Of a DNA stretch of 64,000 nt, positions 2,010-58,389 are shown piece by piece. The notes below the pieces were generated by a model, which saw only the letters and a program-made list of their open reading frames with translations, did not search any database and had not been told where the DNA came from. A program made the translations under genes and the position numbers. This DNA is from Mytilus trossulus (lineage: Eukaryota), in contig NC_086373.1 in assembly GCF_036588685.1 (NCBI RefSeq), positions 81,282,001-81,346,000 on the forward strand, given 5' to 3'. How positions within the stretch are numbered: position 1 is the first letter of the stretch; every line of letters begins with the position of its first letter.

Positions 2010-3260
2010 GAACATAAACATGGTTTCCGTAGTGGCCATTCCTGCGAAAGTCAACTTCTAATTACTATGCATGACATCATGAAATTATTTGATGCCAAGA
2101 AGCAAATTGATTTAATCATACTGGACTTTAGTAAGGCATTTGACACTGTGCCTCATCGAAAACTCCTACACAAATTAAAGAACTATGGAATTGATGGTAA
2201 TACAAATGCATGGATTAAATCATTCCTAATGCAACGCCACCAGCGAGTTATCGTCGAAGGGGAATTTTCTTCATCTTGTTCCGTCGACTCAGGGGTGCCC
2301 CAAGGAACTATCCTCAGTCCTCTTCTTTTTCTATGTCATATTAATGACTTGCCATTACGTGTAAAATCACAAGTACGTCTGTTTGCTGACGACTGCCTCC
2401 TATATAATACCATCGAGACACCACAGGACCAACTTTAAATACAGGAAGACCTAGATTCACTTGAAACTGGGCAAAGGACTGGGGTATGCGTTTTAATGCC
2501 AGTAAATGTATGTCATCTCAATTCACCGTAGCAGGTCCGCGCTCACATACAGTTACACACTAAGTAACCACACATTAGAGCAGGTCAATGAAAATCCATA
2601 CTTAGGTGTAATTATTAGTGACAATTTGAAATGGTCATCACACATAAACAAATTCTGCAACAAAGCCAATTCTACACTTGGGTTCATTAGACGGAACCTT
2701 AAACACTGCAACAAACATTTTAAGGAAACTGCCTACATCTCACTAGTTCTATCAGTCTTAGATTACTCAGGCACTGTATGGGACCCATACCTACAAAAAG
2801 ACATAAATCGCATAGAGAACATACAAAGAAGAGCAGCTAGATTTGTTTTCAAAGACTATAGACGTACTAGTAGTGTCACCTCCATGATGAAGGACCTTGG
2901 ATGGAAACCTCTTGATGAACGAAGACGAGAACAACGACTGGTACTACTTTATAAAATAGTTAACGACCTGGTAGCCATCCCCACTGAACATCATATCGAA
3001 TTTAATACTAGACCGTCCAGAACTTCTAACGTCAAACAAATAAAACTTTAAAAAATACTGACATTTATAAACATTCTTTTTTTTCCACAAACTATCATTG
3101 ATTGGAACTTACTACCAAATGCTACTGTGAACTGTAAAACTGTGGAAAGTTTTAAGGCAGTTATATCGCGCGACTAGATACCTCAGTGGTGCACACACAT
3201 TTCCTGGATAAGTTTTACTCAGTATTTTGAGAACATTTCCAGTACTCTACAGATACAGAT
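2010..3260 (+). mobile_element. 5'-truncated, decayed non-LTR retrotransposon (LINE) reverse transcriptase
   Basis: RT motifs HGFR..SCESQL, LDFSKAFDTVPH, SGVPQGTILSP, LFADDC, YLGV and IQRRAARFV in ORFs 2067-2438 and 2506-3051, broken by a stop and a frameshift. The 3' end is cagatacagat. Confidence 0.9.
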
Positions 3261-37347: not shown

Positions 37348-38270
37348 AAAGAGGGACGAAAAATACCAAAGGGACAGACAGTCAAACTCATAAATCTAAA
37401 ACAAACTGACAACGCCATGGCTAAAAATGAAAAAGACAAACAATATTACGCATGACACAACATCGAAAACTAAAGAATAAACAACACGAACCCCACCAAA
37501 ACCTAGGGGTGATCTCAGGTGCTCCGGAAGGGTAAGCAGATCCTGCTCCACATGTGACACCCGTCTTGTTGCATAAGATGTAACCAAAGAAAATAAACAA
37601 AATGACAATACATAAAAAACATCATCATACTAGCAGTTAACAGACATGCCAGCTCCAGACTTCAATTAAACTGATTGAAAGAATATGTCTTCATCATATA
37701 AATAGCAGGCACAATCCTTACCGTGAGGGGTTTAGTATCATACTATCATAACACATATGAGAAGAACACAACCCGTGTCATGCCAACAAATGTTTTTTTA
37801 AATATATGATTATTTTGTGCTTTATAAAGAATATTTCCATAAAATAATCGATGTAAAACACCTGGACGTATAAGAAGTCTGCATGTTGAGCTATATTTTC
37901 GAATGATGTCCTTATACCGATGGTAAAATTTTTAGTTAATGTTTTGACTAGTTTGTGATATCGAAAACCCTGGTGTAATAATTTATAAGTTATACGTAAA
38001 TTTCTCTCGTTAAAATCTAAAACAGTGTTACATACACGAGCGAATCGTACAAGTTGAGATATATAAACACCGTAAGATGGTGACAAGGGAACGTCACCTT
38101 CTAAAAATGGATAATTAACGACAGGAAATGAAAAATCATCTCTTTTATCATAAGTTTTAGTATAAAGCTTTCCGTTAATGATATAGATATCAAGATCGAG
38201 GAAAGTGCAGTGGTCATTGTTAGTATTAGCTTTATTTAAAGTAAGTTCAACAGGATACATTTACTAGTAT
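37348..38270 (-). mobile_element. Penelope-like retroelement fragment
   Basis: ORF 37778-38260 has YP.ELTL, FLDLDI, YDKRDDFSFPVVNYPFLEGDVP..PSYGVYISQLVRFARVC and a frameshifted end. Its 3' region resembles 49250-49330. Confidence 0.85.
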
Positions 38271-47894: not shown

Positions 47895-49330
47895 TTCATC
47901 TCCGCTTCGAGTAAGTGTTCTACTACTAATTTATCAGTGCTTCTAACCACCTCCCTTACTACTATCAAAGAACTGGTTATTAACTTTTGTAATAAAGCTT
48001 ATGAAAATATTGGTATTAATTATTTTTGGAGTGTTAAAAATTCTTTAGAGGTTTTAGATAAAATACATGCTTTCAATGGTCCTTACAATTCTGTTGACAG
48101 TTATGATTTTTCTACTCTGTACACTACACTTACACAATCTTATAAAGAAAAAGTTTTTGTATTTGATAAAATGGTCTTTCGAAAAATCTCATTGTAATTT
48201 TATTTGCTGTAACTCGTTTAAGGCCTTTTTCTGTAACGAAAAAGGAAAGTATGCTAGATGCACTTACTGGAAATGTGAGGATATGATTGAAGCTTTAAAC
48301 TTTCTGCTTGATAACATTTATGTACGTTTCGGCGATAAAGTGTATCGTCAGGTAGTAGGTATTCCTATGGGCACCAACTGTGCCCCTTTAATAGCAGATT
48401 TACTTCTATATTGCTATGAATCTCAGTTTATGACCAAACTCAGAAAAGACCCATCATTGTTTCATTTAGTTGATACATTCAAAATAACTACCGTTATTTG
48501 GATGATATTTTTTCGTTGAATAATCCAGAGTTCTCTAAATATACTTCAGAAATTTACCCAAACGAACTTACTTTAACTAAATCTAACATAAACAGCAGCA
48601 GCTGTCCTTTTCTAGATTTAGACATTTCAATTTCAAACGGGAAACTTCACACTAAAATTTACGACAAAAGAGACGATTTTTCATTTCCTATTGTTAATTT
48701 TCCTTTTTTAGACGGCGATGTGCCTTTGGCTCCATCATACGGTGTTTATATATCGCAACTCGTTCGGTTTGCCCGTGTGTGTTCTGATGTCATAGATTTT
48801 AACGAACGTAATCAATGCATCACTGGTAAATTGTTGTGTCAGGGATTTCGATACCATAAATTACTTAAAACTTTTACTAAATTCTTTCATAGATACAAAG
48901 ATTTGATTAGTAAATTTGGCTATACCTGTAGAAAGCTTATTAAAAATTGTATTTCACATCCTAAATTTTATGGTAATCTTGTACTTAAAGCGAGGAAATC
49001 ACTATGTGATCCTTGTAAACTCGTCGAACCTTTAAACAAACTTATAAGTAAGGGTTATCGTACCAATATTGTAATTAGATCTCTGAATATAGTTCACATT
49101 GGCACTAATATTGATTTTGTCATTAGCAAATTAAAACATAACTAAATTTCATTATCTTTTGAGGCGAGATGTATAGAGACACAGACACGTTAACTTTTAT
49201 TTCTATAGATGTCGCTCTTCACTATACTACTACCTGTCGATACATTTATTTTTGACATTGCACTAGTCATGTCTTCTTTGACTATTAATGACGTTAAAAT
49301 ACTAAATCCCTGTGATGTGTTTTTGATAAG
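47895..49330 (+). mobile_element. Penelope-like retroelement RT, 5'-truncated with two frameshifts
   Basis: ORFs 47937-48197, 48067-48519 and 48498-49145 carry YDFSTLYT, RQVVGIPMGTNCAPLIADLLLY, RYLDDIF, FLDLDI and YDKRDDFSFPIVNFPFLDGDVP. Confidence 0.9.
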
Positions 49331-51537: not shown

Positions 51538-53816
51538 CAAAGACGGTTCACTGGCGCTTTGTTAAGCATACGCTATATTAAAAGAACGATTAAAGACACA
51601 TAATATCTTTAAGAAGCATTGCTATATTATTTCTTTTATATATGAAAAAGAATGCACACACAGAGTTTTAGATGATATGTTGCTGGATATAATAGTAAGG
51701 AGATATGGTATATTTGCCAATGAGACAACTATCCACCGAAGGTCAAATGTAGTGGATGTATAATAAGCAAGCCGGGTGCAGGATTTTCTCGCTGCTCTTT
51801 GGCCGAGTTGTTGTCTCTTTAACACATTTGCCATTTCTATTCTCAATTTAATGTTTAGTGTCTGAGAAACGAAAACGACCATACATCTTTTAAAATTGGC
51901 CACTGAACATTGAAAATGAGGTCCAGTCCGATAAAACCTACCAGACTGACTTGCAACCATTCCGTACACCAATTGAATAATTAGTTCACTAAACATATTG
52001 CTTACAGATACTATCGGATACTAATAGACATCATGAACACCTCTACGGGTTACACTAGTGGGGAACACTCTGTGTAATTCTGTGAACACAGTGACAGTGT
52101 TGTGTTATTTTGTTTGTCTTTACGTGGTCTTTCGTTTTTCTGACATGGCGCTGTCCTTTTATTTACACTCATTCCATGCACGTAGTATAGTTAACCTATA
52201 GGTTAGAGTACCTGAGATACAACTTGACAACGCAAAATTAACCTTGACCACTGACCATGAAATGAGGTCAAGGTCATATTAATCCTGTCTGACTGGCATG
52301 TATATTAAACACATCCCCCCAACATGGTTGTCCCATCAACAACAACTGATGAACACATGGCATTTTTATAAATGATATGAAGTGTGCATGTTTACAACTT
52401 TCCGGCTGAAATGTGAATTTAATAAGAATTTGAAGTCGAGACGGGAGTTTTAGCCTTCAATTCAACAAATATCTAGTTTTTCAAGAACACCCGGATCTTA
52501 ATTATGTAAGATTATAAGATTTTAACAGGAAAGCAAATTATATTATAAGATAGTTTCCGTCTGACATATAACATTATGTCACACAATGATCACATTTTCA
52601 CAGCAATCACTTTAAATACATATATTCATCTATCGCGACCGTTTTGAAATATATGGCATTTTCATCCAAAAACATGTTCTGTCGGGGAAACCAACGTTAT
52701 AAGATCCTTCATTGTAGTATAATATATGCATGTCTACATTGTTTTCGTTTCGACTTGAATTATAAAATAGTTTTTTTATGAACAGCTGCTAAAAAGCATT
52801 GATCATTCTATATTATATAAATTATATATAAAAATTATAAATTGTAAATCAATTTGTTCAAACTAACTTACCAGTTTCCTTTACGTACTCGGATATGAAA
52901 GTGTGTGACAGTCCTTCTCAATAACAAACTATTTTGAGAAGAGTTCATGAATATAATTTAAAGTTTATAAAAAAAAGTTAACACTTGTCTTTAATATACT
53001 AATTATAACTTGATTGATTTTCAAATCAGGTATTTGTAATACAATTTTCACTTTTGTAGAACAAATAATAAATATGGAACAAACTACTAGATAAAATTAA
53101 CAAAGCTCCCTCATAAAATAAATGCCTCCACAAACTGACCAGATAATTGGTCTGATGAAGAGATCTATTACAATGACTATACAGAGCCGTAAGTCACGAA
53201 CAAAATAGTATGCAAAATAACTTAGAGATCCTGTACTGGAAATCAGGAGTCAAAAGTTTGCCATATGTCACCGACTATAGGAATATAGACAGGCTAATAG
53301 TACATTTTGCCTCCAAAAGATGCAAGCAGTTTGTGTCTCACCAATATGTGTGCGTATATAAGAAAATATACTCCTATATTTACTTTGTTATCCCGACAAT
53401 GGCAAGGCTGGTAATACAGAAAAGTGTAATTAACCCTTTTTAGAAAGCGATTTACGTGAATGTATAAATTGTTACGATTTTCCCCCTTTTTGCCGGGAAG
53501 CGTTTCAAGATTTCAAGATTTTTTAATTGTGCATTCGGGCGTAGTTTGTGAAAAAAATAGGACACAACAAATACAGTAAAAATACATCTTTATTTAAAAA
53601 TGCAATTCAAAATCGAAAATAAACAAAATAATCAGCCCAATTATATATAAGCAATGCATTTGCGATAGAACCAAAAAGATCCGTCACCTCTTTAACAACT
53701 TATAGAAATTATAAAGCAATGATTTCAATAAATGTTACATTAGTTTTTTCTATGTTGAAGAGAAAATGATCATAGAAATACTGAAGAAAAAAATCAGTGC
53801 AAAGAAATTTTTAAAG

Positions 53817-56800
53817 TCATGTATTCTTAAGCACGTCATTGTACATCTTGTAGACATCACTAAAACTTGTTTCGTTGACAGTAAATCCGAGCTCATTGAT
53901 GCGCTTCAAAGCCCACGGTAAATCTTTATTGTACTGTAATGCCGCTGCCAGGACGCCAATAAATGCTGAAATAAATCAGTTTAGATACTATAACGTGTTT
54001 ATGTGAATTAAAATGCAATTTGGATGTCATCATATTTTACCGTATAGAGGATTATATTAGCGGAGTGTAAATATTCACGGATAGAACAAATCGCCAAAAT
54101 AAATTCCGTCAATTGAAAAGTGCACAAGCAAAGGTATTGAGAAAAGTTTTGAATCCGCCAAAATAATAATCGCAATATATTTCATATACCTTATTAAATG
54201 AAAATCGCGAAATTTTACACCAGGTAAAATAACTCGCTAGATACGGTAGTATATACGGGAGAATTAATATACTATACAAATCAAAGGTGCCTAATGTTGC
54301 GAATTTTTTTTTTTTTTTAAAAGATCTATTCTTTGTAATTATTCATTGTACTAGATTTGTAGATGCGCAAGACGGTAATTCTATAAAAAAAAAATTAACT
54401 TGGGCCACATTCTCGAGATGAAAACTCTTTTTTTTTAAATTTCCTGTTGTCATTAGGACTAAGGTTCTTCCAAAGAATGCATTCAGGTTATCTGCAGTAT
54501 GACCATATGTGCAGCCATAAACATTACTGGGTGCACACGTTAGTCTAAACTAAGATAAACAAAAAATAATAGGAGTCAACACGGCCATATTTGTCAGAAG
54601 GTAAAGGAACCTCAAAAACGCATGGTGCAACTATCATGCATAATGGTATCGTTGACCGAGATTGAAAAAAGTAAACTAGAAATTGATGGGTAATGATAAA
54701 TCATAAACACATGTTGTTTCTATTAGATATATTTGTCAGTAAGACACAAACAATTATGGGGTTTTACAAAGATAAAGGATAACAAGAATGTGTCCAAAGT
54801 ACACGGATGCCCCACTCGCACTATCATTTTCCATGTTCAATGGACCGTGAAATTGGGTCAAAGTAAAACTTGGCTTAAAAATTAGAAAGATCATAACATA
54901 AGAAACATGTGTACTAAGTTTGAAGTTGATTGGACTTCAGCTTCATCAAAAACAACCTCGACCAAAAACTTTGAACTGAAGCAGGACAGACGGACGGACG
55001 AACGAACGGACGGTACGACAAACGGTACGAGTAACGACGGACGGACAAACGGACACACAGACAATAAAACATAATGCCCTTTTACTATCGGTAGGTGGGG
55101 CATAAAAAACAAATTGTTCTGCCCTATGACTTTTTGTTGGTAGTTGACCTTGATTATGGCCACGTTATCTTTATGTATCATGGCCGTTTGACTCCAGGTT
55201 AATGACTCTAGTTGACCTCATCACTGAATGAAAAATAGAATGAGCAAATAATATATTTTCATGGTCTATTAATATTTACCAGCTCTTTTTCCTATAGCAC
55301 AATGAAACAAAACTGGACCGTCTCGTCCTATGTCTAGTAGCTTGTCCTTGTACTGTTGAAATACATCTGCGCTGTATGTTACATTTAAATCTGAAATATA
55401 ATTTTATCTTAATTTTAAATAGGCAAATATAGTATGGAAAACTAATAATCCGTGAATACTGGTGCACATTTAGGAATATTACTTCATTTGCTTTAGCTGG
55501 TAAGCTGAAAAAGTTATAAATGAAGTTGATTTAAAAATGAAAGAAATAAAGCTTGACAACCAGAGCATGTAGAAATTTATGATGCAAATATCAAATGTTT
55601 TGTAAACATATTAAAAAGTTGTAACTATGGTTATAAACAATGTTTAACAGTTAATAACGGAGCAGTAATTTCAATGTTTTTTTCTTACGGGACCTTTGAT
55701 TTACTTCAGGAGAAATTTTACCTAAATTTCATACTGGACATTCATTTCACCTTATTGCAAATAAAATAAAAGCGCATACATTCAAAAACATTTTTTTTCG
55801 TCTTTTTTTCTATAATATTCACTTCACTTTAAATGTTATTTTTAGAAATTCTTAAATTTGTAAGATTAAAAAGCAACCATACCTAAAGGTAAATGGTAAT
55901 ATTTCAATGATGATTCCTTAAAATGTTTGCTTTCAATTTCTTCATTAAAGCCAATTTCGTCACCATACTCCTCGGCGTTCTGGGTTTCATAATTAACCAT
56001 TGATGAAGGAGATATATGTTTTCTGTCCAAGGCTGGATCTAAGACCACTTTTTCCAAAGTCGATTGTGTTTGTCGCACAGGGTTATAGTTCTCGTCATAA
56101 GTATTGACGTTGTCTGGTATGTTGATGAGATTTACAGTCTCTTGTGAAGGATTGCTGTCCAAAGTTTTACCCATCCGCATATTGATGACCGATTTAAATC
56201 CATGAGCTTCCAGTTCCTTTAAATGCCCCCTTCTAATCTGACCGGCAGTAAACCAATTCTTATACACAGGATGAGCAAGCCAATATCCTAACCAATTTTG
56301 ATATGCATCACATTTTGGTGGGTTACTAACGATTGGCTCACCTGTTATTTCTGCAACAACCGATTTCAACTTATCTGCTGTGAAATCCATTCCCATTAGA
56401 GCACTCATTTTATAGAATTTCTCACTGTTAACTTTTGGTTCGTATTTAGAGTCCAGTTTTGACATGTGAGCCGTATGCAATAATGTTGTAAAAGCTACAG
56501 CTTGTGGTTGACTGCCATAGAGCAAAATTGGGTTCTCCATTTCAATAATTGAGTGGGTTAGTTTCTCAACTGCTTTAACACAAGCCCAGTCTTCGTTCTC
56601 TTTCAGAATGGCATCAAACTGAAGACCGGCAATCTTTGCAGCATATTTGGCATCTAATACAGATGCTAGTTGTTCACCCCCAAACTGACCAGGGTCGTTT
56701 TCTTGGTATAGAGATATAACGCCATTAAATCCTCCATCATGTGCGTATTTTATTTGCGTTTCTGTTAATCCTCCAGCAACATAAAGTTTTGGTGTCACTT

Positions 56801-56960
56801 CTTTTGCCCACCATAATTTCTTTGATGATTTGAATCCAGGAGCACTTCTTGGGGACAAAGTATCAAGGCGAAAATCAACACCTCCTGACGACATAGAGCG
56901 AAAAAAGAAAATTCCATACTGAACAACTGCTGTATTCCTCTTTGCTATTCTAACAACCAT
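53817..56960 (-). CDS. Tandem DUF442/TIGR01244-like (sulfurtransferase / PTP-fold) domain protein
   Basis: Exons 56960 (or 56894)-55883, 55390-55280 and 53965-53817, GT-AG and in phase. Domain 1: LYVAGGL..GGFNGVISL..AAKIAGLQF..PILLYGSQ. Domain 2: WFTAGQI..ELEAHGFKSVINMR..LKYYHLPL..GPVLFHCAIGKRAAFIGVLAAA..WALKRINELGF. Confidence 0.8.
54040..54246. mobile_element. Tc1/mariner(pogo)-type MITE with TA TSD
   Basis: ta|ccgtatagaggattat...ataactcgctagatacgg|ta. Confidence 0.6.
54781..55109 (+). mobile_element. Short HINE/pearl-like element
   Basis: aacaagaatgtgtcc..atgcccc start, gacg microsatellite, 3' atgccc...ggggcataaaaaa. Confidence 0.7.
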
Positions 56961-57357
56961 TATGCTAGTGAATTGCGCACTTATAATATAGTCAATGATG
57001 ATAAATATATGACCTCCGTGACCTATTGCTTTCATAACAGAGATTTAAATTTGTATGGCATGCTGAGGCAGTCATAAAGTAAAATCAATAAAGGATTATG
57101 ATATGTAAACAACTTCGTCTGATATATCGAAGTGAGTTTTTCGGATAGATAAATTAAAGTGGTAAGTTATATGAATTATGAAATATTTGACTAGAGCCGT
57201 CATTATTCTTTTTTTTATTGTTTAAAAACATGTACCAATAAAGTTTTTGAAAGATCATATATTAATTTCATGTTTGTTCTTTATGTGCTTGATCAAAATT
57301 CATATACATTTCAATATCATTGATGTTTTATATGTTTGGAGATAAATTTATACGGGC

Positions 57358-58389
57358 CAGGGGCGGATCCAGGATTTTCAGTTAGGGGGGGCGCAAATTT
57401 TATTTTCGACGAGCGGAGCGAGGCGAAAATTTTTTTTGAGTTTTTTTTTTTAGCTAAAATTATTGAAATATTCTTCTAAAGGGGTGAAATGTAGATATCT
57501 CGAACTAAAGATTGTGTGTTTAAATTAGCGAGGAATTAAAGTTTCAAGCTGAAACCGCCTTAATCCACACCTGACAACAATCTACACTGAGATAGACGGG
57601 CGGACAGACGGACGCAAAGTGTGACGATATCACAATTGCTCACCTGACCAATATATTTTTCAAACTAAAAATGATATCTACCAGCGATTTTCAATTGTCC
57701 TTTCATACTATCTGCTTTTTAAAATACTTTTTTGTTTTTCGGAGGTCGTGCGAGACTTTACTGTGTTCGCCACAAACAACTAAAATCAGAATGAGATGCA
57801 TTTACGCAGTTATATCTATTTTCTTGGGATCCCAAGCATACGATAATACGGTACAGCATTCGGCTGAATATTTAGGTTGCAAGTGAGAAATACATATAGA
57901 CAAAGAGATACAAATTAATAAAACTAACCTTTCGCTTGAAACAGTATTTCTATATATATCTTTCAATAAAAGAATTTCACATGCCGACTGTTTTCTTGAC
58001 TGTGTCATGATGAAATTGTGAAATTTAAGTGAGTAAGGGATGTTTTGGAACTTCGATTATCAATAAAATTGATTATAAAAACCGAAAATTCTATGTAACA
58101 TTTTTTTTTACTTTAACTGCTAAAAACCGATTATCGATTTGTCATCAAACGCAGCTCCGCGTTTGACACTTTCCTTTGAAATTATTTATTGAACTTTAAT
58201 AAAGCGTTGGTCAGTTGATTAGTAATCATGTTGATTCTGTTAAACTGACTGCATGTTTTATATAATTTGAATGTTAAAAAAGATTGAATGGTCTCTTCTG
58301 ATACTTTAATATGTTGAAGTCAAACCATGCTTTGCAAATTTTAGGGGGGGGGCGCACGCCCGCCACGCCCCCGCCTAAATCCGCCCCTG
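57358..58389. mobile_element. 1.03-kb non-autonomous TIR element with 5-bp TSD (hAT5-like)
   Basis: caggggcggatccagg...cctaaatccgcccctg; TSD cgggc at 57353-57357 and 58390-58394. Confidence 0.8.

What the first reader, a model, noticed from the sequence alone, without database searches (positions are those of the whole stretch)
53817..56960. Spliced animal gene for a bacterial-type tandem DUF442 sulfurtransferase-like protein with one active and one dead domain
Seen: the 389-aa ORF lacks a catalytic site until two downstream exons are spliced on. These supply GPVLFHCAIGKRA (CxxGxR, CX4R rather than the CX5R of classical PTPs). The N-terminal repeat has PILLYGSQPQA at the same position, with Cys and Arg lost. 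Known: DUF442/TIGR01244 domains are mostly bacterial, have a CxSGxR loop, and occur fused to or beside sulfide:quinone oxidoreductase and persulfide dioxygenase (Blh), acting as sulfurtransferases. Inference: an old horizontally acquired or patchily retained sulfide/persulfide-handling enzyme in a marine invertebrate, with a pseudo-enzyme partner domain.
Basis: partly seen in the sequence, partly recalled or inferred. Interest (0 to 1): 0.78.

Follow-up and report, generated by a model that had tools for sequence, protein, structure and literature searches.

The report
Mussel tandem DUF442 sulfurtransferase-like gene
This is a real, expressed three-exon mussel gene for a protein with two copies of a cysteine-enzyme domain otherwise studied only in bacteria, one copy disabled, and it belongs to an old, unstudied family found in a scattered set of marine animals and protists.

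Summary
The minus-strand gene has three exons (56960-55883, 55390-55280, 53965-53817). Transcript contigs from three studies carry exactly these two GT..AG junctions. Exon 2 supplies the loop HCAIGKR (C-X4-R). The N-terminal half is a diverged copy of the C-terminal half (hhalign E 7e-23), with LYGSQPQ where the Cys loop should be.

DUF442/BLH_phosphatase (PF04273) is the best-matching family (29 of 39 relatives). The window protein itself stays below every curated cut-off.

I found no sign of recent bacterial transfer:
- Named relatives are molluscs, annelids, hemichordates and a chrysophyte.
- Two pattern scans of prokaryote genomes found none.
- The gene tree roughly follows the animal tree.
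- The first intron position appears widely shared.

Most relatives have a signal peptide plus a KDEL-like end or a hydrophobic tail, and they keep a Cys in both domains. The window's mytilid clade lost four things: the signal peptide (replaced by a basic presequence), the KDEL end, a conserved N-glycosylation sequon and the domain-1 Cys. Patella shows the same set of changes independently. The dead domain is still under purifying selection (dN/dS 0.16).

My inference is a Cys-persulfide sulfurtransferase that has left the secretory pathway, possibly for mitochondria.

The parts
55883..56960 (-). Exon 1, coding part. ATG at 56960 (MVVRIAK...). The last base, 55883, is the first base of a split codon. 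It encodes the basic N-terminus, all of domain 1 and the first two thirds of domain 2.
   Evidence: ORF; sequence; transcript contigs cover 55883-57023; 100% self-match and paralogues; orthologue starts.
56961..57023 (-). 5' untranslated part seen in a transcript contig. It stops short of the upstream in-frame ATG at 57035.
   Evidence: X5 record 24 ends at 57023. No joint to any upstream exon was reported.
56889..56960 (-). N-terminal about 24 residues (MVVRIAKRNTAVVQYGIFFFRSMS): basic, almost no acidic residues, weak hydrophobic core. Proposed presequence (inferred).
   Evidence: 4 K/R and 1 D/E in the first 30 residues; best 9-residue hydropathy 1.79, against 1.97-3.74 in the 11 KDEL-type mollusc relatives.
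56319..56840 (-). Domain 1 (residues about 41-214): DUF442-like repeat without a catalytic Cys.
   Evidence: hhalign of domain 1 against domain 2; NCBIfam TIGR01244 E 0.005 on residues 54-148; dN/dS 0.16.
56499..56531 (-). Degenerate loop PILLYGSQPQA, at the position of the Cys loop.
55391..55882 (-). Intron 1 (492 nt, GT..AG, phase 1).
   Evidence: joint 55390|55883 in X2 and X5.
55280..55390 (-). Exon 2 (111 nt), carrying the active-site loop.
55281..55319 (-). Loop GPVLFHCAIGKRA. Cys codon at 55301-55299, loop-end Arg codon at 55286-55284.
   Evidence: Family consensus HC-x-[ST]-G-x-R.
53966..55279 (-). Intron 2 (1314 nt, GT..AG, phase 1). It contains an abundant interspersed repeat at about 54679-55071.
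   Evidence: joint 53965|55280 in X1, X2 and X5. Summed depth rises to 78,000 over 54679-55071, with many loose ends.
53817..53965 (-). Exon 3, coding part. Stop codon TGA at 53819-53817.
53500..53816 (-). 3' untranslated region, at least down to the edge of the stretch laid.
   Evidence: X1 record 1 covers 53500-53965; X2 reaches 53577; X5 reaches 53638.

Best explanation
The gene is a transcribed, three-exon Mytilus paralogue of an old eukaryotic family. Members of that family carry two tandem DUF442/BLH_phosphatase-like domains of the cysteine-phosphatase (PTP/DSP) superfamily.

Ancestral state (inferred). The protein travels the secretory pathway: it has a signal peptide, and either an ER-retention KDEL-like end or a hydrophobic tail that looks like a GPI signal. 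Both domains carry a six-residue Cys loop of the kind that defines sulfurtransferases. Domain 1 has C-x-x-G-[YW]-[TS], ending like TST's loop. Domain 2 has C-x-[ST]-G-x-R, ending like the DUF442 loop of the Cupriavidus enzyme.

The window's clade. A duplication within the mussel lineage produced this clade. It then lost the signal peptide (now a basic, mitochondrial-looking presequence), the KDEL end, a conserved N-glycosylation sequon and the domain-1 Cys.

Proposed mechanism (inferred, not shown). The domain-2 Cys accepts a sulfane sulfur from thiosulfate, glutathione persulfide or polysulfide. It forms a Cys-persulfide, helped by the loop-end Arg, and passes the sulfur to an acceptor. Domain 1 serves as a constrained, non-catalytic partner, much like the inactive N-domain of mitochondrial rhodanese. 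The place of action is outside the secretory pathway, most likely mitochondria.
For: Gene and splicing.

Internal duplication: hhalign probability 99.5-99.7%, E 7e-23 (local) and 6e-26 (global).

Family assignment:
- PF04273 matches 29 of 39 relatives at E<=0.01.
- It is above its 26.1-bit cut-off in 5 of the 8 proteins scanned.
- NCBIfam TIGR01244 and Blh match exon 1 at E 0.005 and 0.003.
- The Atlas feature search for the 93% orthologue returned BLH_phosphatase or PTP-NADK families for all the named clusters shown (scores 0.85-0.90, a lead only).

Loop chemistry, from passages read:
- The rhodanese loop has six residues from Cys and ends in Arg or Thr/Ser.
- DUF442 of CpSQR has CRTGTR, and R99I loses about 95% of activity.
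- TST has CRKGVT, and T253V is inactive (PMC8533005).
- The Blh DUF442 domain is a thiosulfate:cyanide and thiosulfate:GSH sulfurtransferase (PMC5823870).
- CpSQR's DUF442 domain acts through Cys94 (PMC9163753).
- The window loop is CAIGKR.

No conserved acidic residue follows the HLP[LVI] strand, which is where I recall DSPs carrying their general acid (columns 398-405).

Age and vertical descent: (molluscs, annelids, hemichordates, Epipyxis); a protist contig with Ank-BTB and annexin neighbours; the tree; the shared three-exon structure of the three kinds of paralogue; intron read-through tails.

Exit from the secretory pathway: N- and C-termini; sequon present in 11 of 11 KDEL-type molluscs, 0 of 9 in the window clade, 0 of 3 in Patella.

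Constraint on the dead domain: dN/dS 0.16 over 170 codons against the chromosome-6 copy.
Against: - The window protein, scanned exon by exon, and its 93% orthologue P0001 reach no curated cut-off for any family.
- The profile search of solved structures gave nothing significant. The best relevant hits were a poxvirus-type DSP (E 0.011), TpbA (0.23) and DUF442 3gxg (0.67).
- PTP-NADK (15 of 39) and DSPc (12 of 39) also match relatives, and one protist member passes the DSPc cut-off. A phosphatase function is therefore not excluded.
- One solved DUF442 protein is described as a putative phosphatase with bound phosphate (PMC4409338, passages).
- No fold model could be made.
- No targeting predictor was available. 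The window's own N-terminus has a moderately hydrophobic stretch and could be a weak signal peptide or signal anchor.
- No SQR or persulfide dioxygenase gene is evident among ORFs of 110 aa or more in the window.
- No activity or expression-response data exist.
Confidence: 0.55

Rival explanations
1. It is a cysteine phosphatase of the DSP/PTP type acting on some phospho-substrate (protein, lipid, sugar or nucleotide). The short loop is merely a variant P-loop.
For: - DSPc, PTP-NADK, Tc-R-P and Y_phosphatase families match 9-15 of 39 relatives.
- The protist member on L010 reaches 35.6 bits against the 33.5-bit DSPc cut-off.
- The best relevant PDB sequence hits are DSPs.
- The DUF442 structure 3GXG/3GXH is described as a putative phosphatase with bound phosphate (PMC4409338, passages).
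Against: - The loop is C-X4-R, not C-X5-R, in the window and across the family.
- There is no conserved general-acid Asp.
- The two DUF442 domains that have been assayed are sulfurtransferases (PMC5823870, PMC9163753, PMC8533005).
- PF04273 is the commonest and best match.
Confidence: 0.22
2. The protein is still secretory. The N-terminus works as a weak signal peptide or signal anchor, and loss of KDEL simply turns an ER-resident enzyme into a secreted or membrane-bound one.
For: The window N-terminus has a stretch (AVVQYGIFFF) with 9-residue hydropathy 1.79. That is close to the lowest KDEL-type value, 1.97 in Ylistrum.
Against: - Clade members P0007, P0010 and P0006 have no hydrophobic core (1.16-1.50), with 5-8 K/R and 0-1 D/E in the first 30 residues.
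- The sequon conserved in 11 of 11 KDEL-type molluscs is absent in 9 of 9 clade members.
- Patella shows the same set of changes independently.
Confidence: 0.2
3. The gene was recently acquired from bacteria by horizontal transfer.
For: The domain family is mostly bacterial. The nearest Atlas clusters are bacterial single-domain proteins (a lead only).
Against: - The gene has two spliceosomal introns, shared by all paralogues and apparently by many distant relatives.
- Relatives occur in three animal phyla and in protists.
- No prokaryote relative turned up in two pattern scans of 185,579 species genomes.
- GC content is like the surrounding genome.
- Similarity to the bacterial model is only E 1e-10 at best.
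Confidence: 0.03

Closest known systems
DUF442 (BLH_phosphatase, PF04273 / TIGR01244) domains of Xylella fastidiosa Blh and of Cupriavidus pinatubonensis SQR
   Same: Best-matching family for the relatives. The six-residue loop starts with Cys and ends with Arg: CRTGTR in CpSQR, CAIGKR here, CRTGYR in several relatives (PMC8533005). Sulfur transfer through a Cys-persulfide is the proposed chemistry here.
   Different: The bacterial domains are single, and are fused to or sit beside SQR or persulfide dioxygenase. Here two domains sit in tandem in a eukaryotic protein. Domain 2 has an insertion of roughly 60 residues in the animal members. No SQR or PDO neighbour was seen. The window protein is below the family cut-offs.
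Mitochondrial thiosulfate sulfurtransferase (rhodanese, TST)
   Same: Two homologous domains, with only the C-terminal one carrying the catalytic Cys. The six-residue loop of TST, CRKGVT (PMC8533005), has the same pattern as the ancestral domain-1 loop of this family (for example CNRGYT). TST is mitochondrial, which is the location proposed here.
   Different: The fold family is different (rhodanese/Cdc25, not PTP/DSP). The Pfam Rhodanese model gives only 1 of 39 weak matches. The likeness is one of loop and architecture, not of membership.
Shewanella DUF442 structure 3GXG/3GXH and Pseudomonas TpbA (bacterial DSP-like proteins)
   Same: Same superfamily. Both are weakly hit by the family profile over the C-terminal domain (E 0.67 and 0.23).
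   Different: They are described as (putative) phosphatases (PMC4409338). Both are single-domain bacterial proteins. Sequence similarity is not significant.
Receptor-type tyrosine phosphatases with tandem D1-D2 domains (recalled, not tested)
   Same: Tandem catalytic-fold domains, one of which is a conserved pseudo-enzyme.
   Different: There the membrane-distal domain is the inactive one, the loop is C-X5-R, and the domains are cytosolic.

Membership tests
DUF442 / BLH_phosphatase (PF04273; TIGR01244) | Match to the family model above the curated cut-off, for the window protein itself | tested here: not met
   Pfam on the exon-1 ORF gave no PF04273 hit at E<=1. NCBIfam TIGR01244 scored 16.8 bits against a cut-off of 85.85 (E 0.005), and Blh E 0.003. 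Exons 2 and 3 alone gave nothing. The 93% orthologue P0001 matched no family at E<=0.01. The exons were not joined for this test.
DUF442 / BLH_phosphatase (PF04273; TIGR01244) | Match to the family model above the cut-off in clear homologues of the window protein | tested here: met
   Scores against the 26.1-bit cut-off: P0012 39.9, P0019 35.3, P0016 31.1, P0014 29.3, P0015 26.8. 29 of 39 relatives match at E<=0.01. Hits fall on domain 1 in some proteins and on domain 2 in others.
DUF442 / BLH_phosphatase (PF04273; TIGR01244) | Six-residue active-site loop C-x-x-G-x-R (C-X4-R) | tested here: met
   CAIGKR in exon 2. This matches the CRTGTR loop of the assayed DUF442 domain (PMC8533005, passages). 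Domain 1 of the window protein lacks it.
DUF442 / BLH_phosphatase (PF04273; TIGR01244) | PTP/DSP-like alpha/beta fold | not testable with these tools
The Atlas holds no model.
DUF442 / BLH_phosphatase (PF04273; TIGR01244) | Sulfurtransferase activity dependent on the loop Cys and Arg | not testable with these tools
   This needs enzyme assays.
DUF442 / BLH_phosphatase (PF04273; TIGR01244) | Fusion to, or neighbourhood with, SQR or persulfide dioxygenase (typical, not obligatory) | tested here: not met
   No such domain is present in the protein, and none is evident among ORFs of 110 aa or more in the 64-kb window. This is a weak test in an intron-rich genome.
Classical dual-specificity / tyrosine phosphatases (DSPc PF00782, C-X5-R) | C-X5-R P-loop | tested here: not met
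   Four residues lie between Cys and Arg in the window and across the domain-2 loops of the relatives tabulated.
Classical dual-specificity / tyrosine phosphatases (DSPc PF00782, C-X5-R) | Conserved general-acid Asp on the loop after the strand preceding the P-loop helix (feature recalled) | tested here: not met
   Residues after HLP[LVI] vary (D, S, E, A, V) among 16 mollusc sequences (columns 398-405).
Classical dual-specificity / tyrosine phosphatases (DSPc PF00782, C-X5-R) | Match to DSPc above its cut-off | tested here: inconclusive
   12 of 39 relatives match at E<=0.01. The mollusc proteins are below 33.5 bits. One protist member scores 35.6 bits. The window protein gives no hit.
Rhodanese (PF00581) | Match to the rhodanese domain model | tested here: not met
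   1 of 39 at E<=0.01 (P0012, 17.6 bits against a 22.2-bit cut-off). The likeness is confined to the loop pattern.

The most novel reading that the evidence does not exclude
Animals and protists have an unrecognised family of secretory-pathway (ER-lumen or cell-surface) tandem sulfurtransferases built on the phosphatase fold. In mussels, and independently in limpets, a duplicate was re-routed to mitochondria, dropped its first catalytic Cys and so converged on the architecture of rhodanese. This would give sulfide-exposed marine invertebrates an extra persulfide-handling enzyme that vertebrates, arthropods and other well-sampled groups appear to lack.
Probability: 0.3. Interest if true: 0.72.

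Novelty: new variant of a known kind. Interest (0 to 1): 0.55.

Why it matters
DUF442 domains have been assayed only in bacteria, where they shuttle sulfane sulfur during sulfide oxidation. An expressed, conserved eukaryotic version has several unusual features: two domains, secretory-pathway marks, and a lineage-specific copy that seems to have changed compartment while turning one domain into a pseudo-enzyme.

Two things follow:
- It gives a concrete candidate for unexplored sulfide or persulfide chemistry in mussels, polychaetes (including vent and seep species) and acorn worms.
- It is a clean natural experiment on how relocalisation and catalytic-site loss go together, having been seen twice independently.

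All database entries I saw for it are 'uncharacterized protein' or automatic names. None of the papers listed by my DUF442/PF04273 searches is about a eukaryotic member, judged by title or abstract start.

Tried and rejected
**Searches that gave nothing useful**
- Pfam on the exon-1 ORF gave only noise (Chordopox_L2, E 0.86).
- The family profile against PDB sequences gave nothing significant. The top rows were chance hits (PCNA E 0.0032 with no single stretch passing; urease on the domain-2 insertion, E 0.025).
- PF04273 searched six-frame in the window's own genome found no match at E<=0.001, although the genome holds five copies of the family. This shows how weak that model is on these exons.

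**Readings considered and rejected**
- Recent bacterial transfer was rejected (see rival explanations).
- I rejected the idea that the dead N-domain is ancestral to the family. Domain-1 Cys is present in 11 of 11 KDEL-type molluscs and in 7 of 8 annelid and hemichordate rows, and in most protist rows.
- A single origin of the Cys-less clades in mussels and Patella was rejected by an AU test (p 8.4e-05, log-likelihood 52.4 lower). The group was named after I had seen the tree, which weakens that test.

**Literature searches**
- 'DUF442': 34 papers, 25 listed.
- 'PF04273': 6 papers, 4 listed.
- 'BLH_phosphatase': 0 papers.
- 'DUF442' + 'eukaryot': 17 papers, 16 listed.
- None of the listed papers concerns an animal or protist member, judged by title or abstract start.
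- One search was badly framed: with min_terms 2 it returned 38,449 papers, and none of the 15 listed holds DUF442. It shows nothing.

**Papers and how much I saw**
- Only passages found by term: PMC5823870, PMC9163753, PMC8533005, PMC4409338.
- All others: search listing only.
- Supplements were closed. Supplementary gene lists of Mytilus genome or transcriptome papers (horizontal-transfer candidates, sulfide or hypoxia responses) might mention this gene. I did not see them.

**Recalled from memory, from no call**
- The position of the DSP general acid.
- The D1-D2 organisation of receptor PTPs.
- The reading of hydrophobic C-terminal tails as GPI signals.
- The reading of basic N-termini as mitochondrial presequences.
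Full report
**1. What is in the sequence**

- The minus strand holds a 389-aa ORF at 55866-57035.
- The sequence shows a GT at 55882-55881 directly after '...YYHLPL' + G. An AG precedes 55390, a GT follows 55280, and an AG precedes 53965.
- In frame, exon 2 reads LNVTYSADVFQQYKDKLLDIGRDGPVLFHCAIGKRA. Exon 3 reads FIGVLAAALQYNK...DVLKNT, then stop. Both introns are phase 1.

**2. Is the spliced model real?**

- The look-up of sequencing runs listed 18 runs from 6 studies that hold 0.37-0.52 of the sampled words of 53700-57100. That share is close to what the exons make up of the stretch.
- I laid four runs from four studies on 53500-57400.
- The joint 53965|55280 (skips 1314) is present in X1, X2 and X5. 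The joint 55390|55883 (skips 492) is present in X2 and X5. Both have CT..AC ends on the + strand, which is GT..AG on the gene's strand.
- A single 1580-nt contig of X5 covers 53638-53965, 55280-55390 and 55883-57023. That is the whole coding region plus both untranslated ends.
- X15 shows no joint, and its contigs run from the exons into introns and flank, so it behaves like DNA or unspliced material.
- Caveats: the runs are contigs labelled 'RNA?' by guess, so abundance, strand and exact ends cannot be read from them. The contigs are 95-99% alike rather than identical. A 99% identical second copy exists in this genome, so the contigs cannot be assigned to one copy.
- Independent support comes from annotated Mytilus proteins of 445-453 aa, which run through the same three pieces. 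tblastn also finds the same three-exon layout in all three kinds of paralogue in this genome.
- The X5 contig ends at 57023, short of the upstream in-frame ATG at 57035. The orthologues start at the MVVRIAK methionine, so 56960 is the likely start.

**3. Two homologous domains, one without the Cys**

- I split an alignment of 39 relatives (A3) at the linker and compared the halves with hhalign.
- Result: probability 99.5% (local, E 7e-23, 142 columns) and 99.7% (global, E 6e-26, 152 columns).
- The P-loop regions are superposed. The window clade's 'LYGSQPQAVAF' lies over 'FHCAIGKRAAF'.
- Domain 2 carries an insertion between the second strand region and the HLP strand, of roughly 60 residues in the animal members. 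The insertion has its own near-invariant motifs: PSQE.V.L.N, RQ, NYE and EFGD.GYNE.

**4. What family is it?**

- The window protein, taken exon by exon, reaches no curated threshold.
  - Pfam gave nothing relevant.
  - NCBIfam TIGR01244 gave E 0.005 on residues 54-148 of domain 1. The Blh equivalog gave E 0.003 at the start of domain 2. Both are far below their cut-offs.
- The 93%-identical M. coruscus protein P0001 also matches nothing at E<=0.01.
- Less diverged relatives do match.
  - PF04273 (BLH_phosphatase, formerly DUF442) is above its 26.1-bit cut-off in 5 of the 8 proteins scanned. The hit falls on domain 1 in some and on domain 2 in others.
  - It matches 29 of 39 relatives at E<=0.01. 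For comparison: PTP-NADK 15, DSPc 12, Tc-R-P 11, Y_phosphatase3 9, Rhodanese 1.
- The family profile against PDB chain sequences gave only insignificant DSP, TpbA and DUF442 hits on the C-terminal domain, plus chance hits.
- The Atlas feature search for P0001 returned BLH_phosphatase or PTP-NADK families for all the named clusters shown, with scores of 0.85-0.90. By the tool's own calibration that is only a lead.

**5. Who has it?**

- The word-index search with exon 1 found 22 proteins among 1699 candidates. Named hits: Mytilus coruscus, M. californianus, M. edulis, M. galloprovincialis, Pinctada, Ylistrum, Haliotis (two species), Aplysia and Patella. Eight came from unlabelled assemblies.
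- A profile of 16 mollusc sequences was scored against 1.84 billion representatives. It gave 578 proteins at E<=0.001, 187 at <=1e-10 and 88 at <=1e-30.
- I looked up 30 of the 150 listed.
  - 13 clusters carry an organism name, and all are eukaryotes: Patella, Aplysia, Elysia, Owenia (three clusters), Capitella, Paralvinella, Saccoglossus (two), Ptychodera, Glandiceps and the chrysophyte Epipyxis (EukProt).
  - The other 17 are unlabelled or carry only JGI's automatic 'DUF442 family' name. None is labelled bacterial.
- A second word-index search with the Saccoglossus protein found 25 proteins among 3537 candidates. Named hits were hemichordates again, Owenia, Mya and the seep tubeworm Lamellibrachia. 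No echinoderm, chordate, arthropod or cnidarian name appeared.
  - This absence is only as good as a word-based prefilter. I also did not see names for 120 of the 150 profile hits.
- Two pattern scans of one genome for each of 185,579 prokaryote species found no relative (32 and 31 pattern matches, none confirmed). These scans see only fairly close relatives.
- A metagenome scan with the short protist-type alignment gave 9 loci.
  - One is a 28-kb contig of 30% GC on which the gene is uninterrupted.
  - Its neighbours are an ankyrin-BTB protein, an annexin and a class-I tRNA synthetase. That points to a compact eukaryotic genome.

**6. Descent**

- I built a careful maximum-likelihood tree of 31 rows: exon 1 of the window plus 30 database proteins. 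459 of 594 columns were kept.
- Rows left out: the isoforms P0005, P0020 and P0026, the paralogue P0039, all protist short forms, and most unlabelled fragments.
- The tree places hemichordates, then annelids, then a starred mollusc clade (100/99).
  - It was drawn rooted on P0070 (an unlabelled environmental sequence), which I chose for drawing. The root is not inferred.
  - Ptychodera does not group with the other two hemichordates.
- Within bivalves, the window clade (9 rows) is sister to the KDEL-type mytilid clade, with support 100/99.
- The window gene pairs with M. coruscus P0001. The chromosome-6 copy belongs with the other annotated Mytilus proteins.
- Within this genome there are five copies:
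  - the window gene;
  - a 99% copy 9.2 Mb away on the same contig, in inverted orientation;
  - an 82% copy on another contig;
  - a KDEL-type paralogue about 25 kb upstream of the window gene, just outside the window (98-99% to M. galloprovincialis LOC143051768);
  - that paralogue's own inverted duplicate.
- Of the 195 proteins stored at that point, 28 stop within 30 residues after the HLP motif.
  - Their first extra residue is Gly in 20, Ser in 4, Arg in 3 and Asp in 1.
  - Gly, Ser and Arg are what NGT codons encode. This is what an ORF caller would produce when reading through a phase-1 GT donor at the same place.
  - I did not see their DNA, so this is an inference.

**7. Cell-biological marks**

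These come (49 rows).

- The 11 KDEL-type mollusc rows:
  - Most have clearly hydrophobic N-termini. Best 9-residue hydropathy is 1.97-3.74, with Ylistrum (1.97) borderline.
  - All 9 that have a complete C-terminus end in KDEL, KEEL, HLEL, KTEL or RVEL.
  - One Owenia protein ends KQEL.
- Other annelid, hemichordate and environmental members end in a hydrophobic tail instead. I read that as a GPI-signal-like or membrane tail.
- The protist short forms end in an invariant Cys.
- Domain-1 loops are mostly H-C-x-x-G-[YW]-[TS]. Domain-2 loops are H-C-x-[ST]-G-x-R.
- The nine rows of the window clade differ on four counts:
  - 4-8 K/R against 0-1 D/E in the first 30 residues, with hydropathy 1.16-2.01;
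  - no KDEL-like end (in the six rows that are complete);
  - no domain-1 Cys;
  - loss of the sequon at the position of N170 of P0012 (11 of 11 KDEL-type molluscs, 0 of 9 here).
- The three Patella rows show the same four changes but form a separate clade.
  - Forcing them together with the mussel clade costs 52.4 log-likelihood units (AU p 8.4e-05).
  - The caveat is that I defined the group after seeing the tree.
- One Ptychodera paralogue lost the domain-1 Cys while keeping a membrane-type N-terminus, so the coupling is not absolute.
- At least three changes of the Cys state are needed on the tree.

**8. Constraint**

Compared with the chromosome-6 copy, exon 1 gave these values (Nei-Gojobori method, my own script):

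| Region | dN/dS |
|---|---|
| Exon 1 overall | 0.16 |
| Dead domain 1 (170 codons) | 0.16 |
| Exon-1 part of domain 2 (145 codons) | 0.12 |
| N-terminal 40 codons | 0.43 |

- The Cys-less domain is therefore maintained, not decaying.
- The 99% duplicate differs by dS 0.022.

**9. Mechanism**

What is known, from passages read:
- The Blh DUF442 domain transfers sulfane sulfur from thiosulfate to cyanide or GSH (PMC5823870).
- The DUF442 domain of Cupriavidus SQR works through Cys94 and limits sulfane-sulfur build-up (PMC9163753).
- The hallmark of sulfurtransferase sites is a six-residue loop that starts with Cys and ends with Arg or Thr/Ser. The end residue is essential in DUF442 (CRTGTR, R99I) and in TST (CRKGVT, T253V) (PMC8533005).

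How the window protein compares:
- Its domain-2 loop, CAIGKR, fits the Arg-ended type.
- The ancestral domain-1 loops (for example CNRGYT) fit the Thr-ended type.
- The loop is one residue shorter than a phosphatase C-X5-R loop.
- No acidic residue is conserved where I recall DSPs having their general acid.

My inference is that domain 2 forms a Cys-persulfide and passes sulfur on. Domain 1 acts as a structural partner. This paralogue works outside the secretory pathway, most likely in mitochondria, where animal sulfide oxidation takes place (general knowledge). None of these steps is shown.

The phosphatase alternative remains open. Related phosphatase families also match, and one DUF442 structure is described as a putative phosphatase (PMC4409338).

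**10. Verdict**

It is wrong, or at least unsupported, on horizontal acquisition. It is incomplete on the family's secretory nature and on the derived status of the dead domain.
- Relative to known systems this is a new variant of a known kind: a known domain family in a new, eukaryotic, tandem, secretory-pathway form, with a relocalised half-dead paralogue.
- The notes returned by the search of earlier findings concern other parts of the window and did not bear on this gene.

Noticed in passing
window 54679-55071 (inside intron 2): An interspersed repeat with very high summed contig depth in all four runs (up to about 78,000), with many contigs ending at 54779-54862. It includes a GTCC/GTTC-rich tract. 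It is probably a common mussel mobile element or an element carried in UTRs, unrelated to the gene.
   Followed up: no
G000:C1:90518518-90553925 (L002, L005) versus window gene and L004: The window gene and its KDEL-type neighbour recur as a pair 9.2 Mb away on the same contig, in inverted orientation. The window-gene copy is 99% identical with dS 0.022, and the neighbour's two copies each match exon 1 at 56%. The spacing differs (about 34 kb against 25 kb). This is either a very recent inverted segmental duplication or an assembly or haplotype duplicate.
   Followed up: partly
G000:C1:81363286-81364299 (L004/L007), about 25 kb beyond the window's right end: A KDEL-type (signal peptide, ...KTEL end) tandem DUF442 paralogue, 98-99% identical to M. 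galloprovincialis LOC143051768. It has the same three-exon structure and the same orientation as the window gene.
   Followed up: partly
Proteins P0022 and P0168 (Patella caerulea, locus tags SNE40_014479 and SNE40_014480): Patella also has adjacent paralogues. All three Patella sequences seen lack the domain-1 Cys, the KDEL end and the sequon. The two with a complete N-terminus (P0023 and P0168) have basic N-termini; P0022 is N-terminally truncated. This parallels the mussel clade.
   Followed up: partly
Alignment A4 (protist short forms); locus L010 6001-7134: Protist members of 370-400 aa lack most of the domain-2 insertion. They have two invariant Cys near the C-terminus, one of them the last residue (ends ...LGC or ...LKC), which suggests a disulfide or a lipid or anchor site. 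On L010 the gene is intronless, between annexin and Ank-BTB genes.
   Followed up: partly
Proteins P0028 (Owenia) and P0032 (unlabelled): In these two members it is the domain-2 Cys that is replaced by Ser (HSGSGHR, HSENSTR), while the domain-1 Cys is kept. This is the reverse of the mussel pattern.
   Followed up: no
window 2067-3051, 37778-38260 and 48067-49145: ORFs with reverse-transcriptase-like and related retroelement-looking translations (judged by eye). They are fragments of mobile elements around the gene.
   Followed up: no
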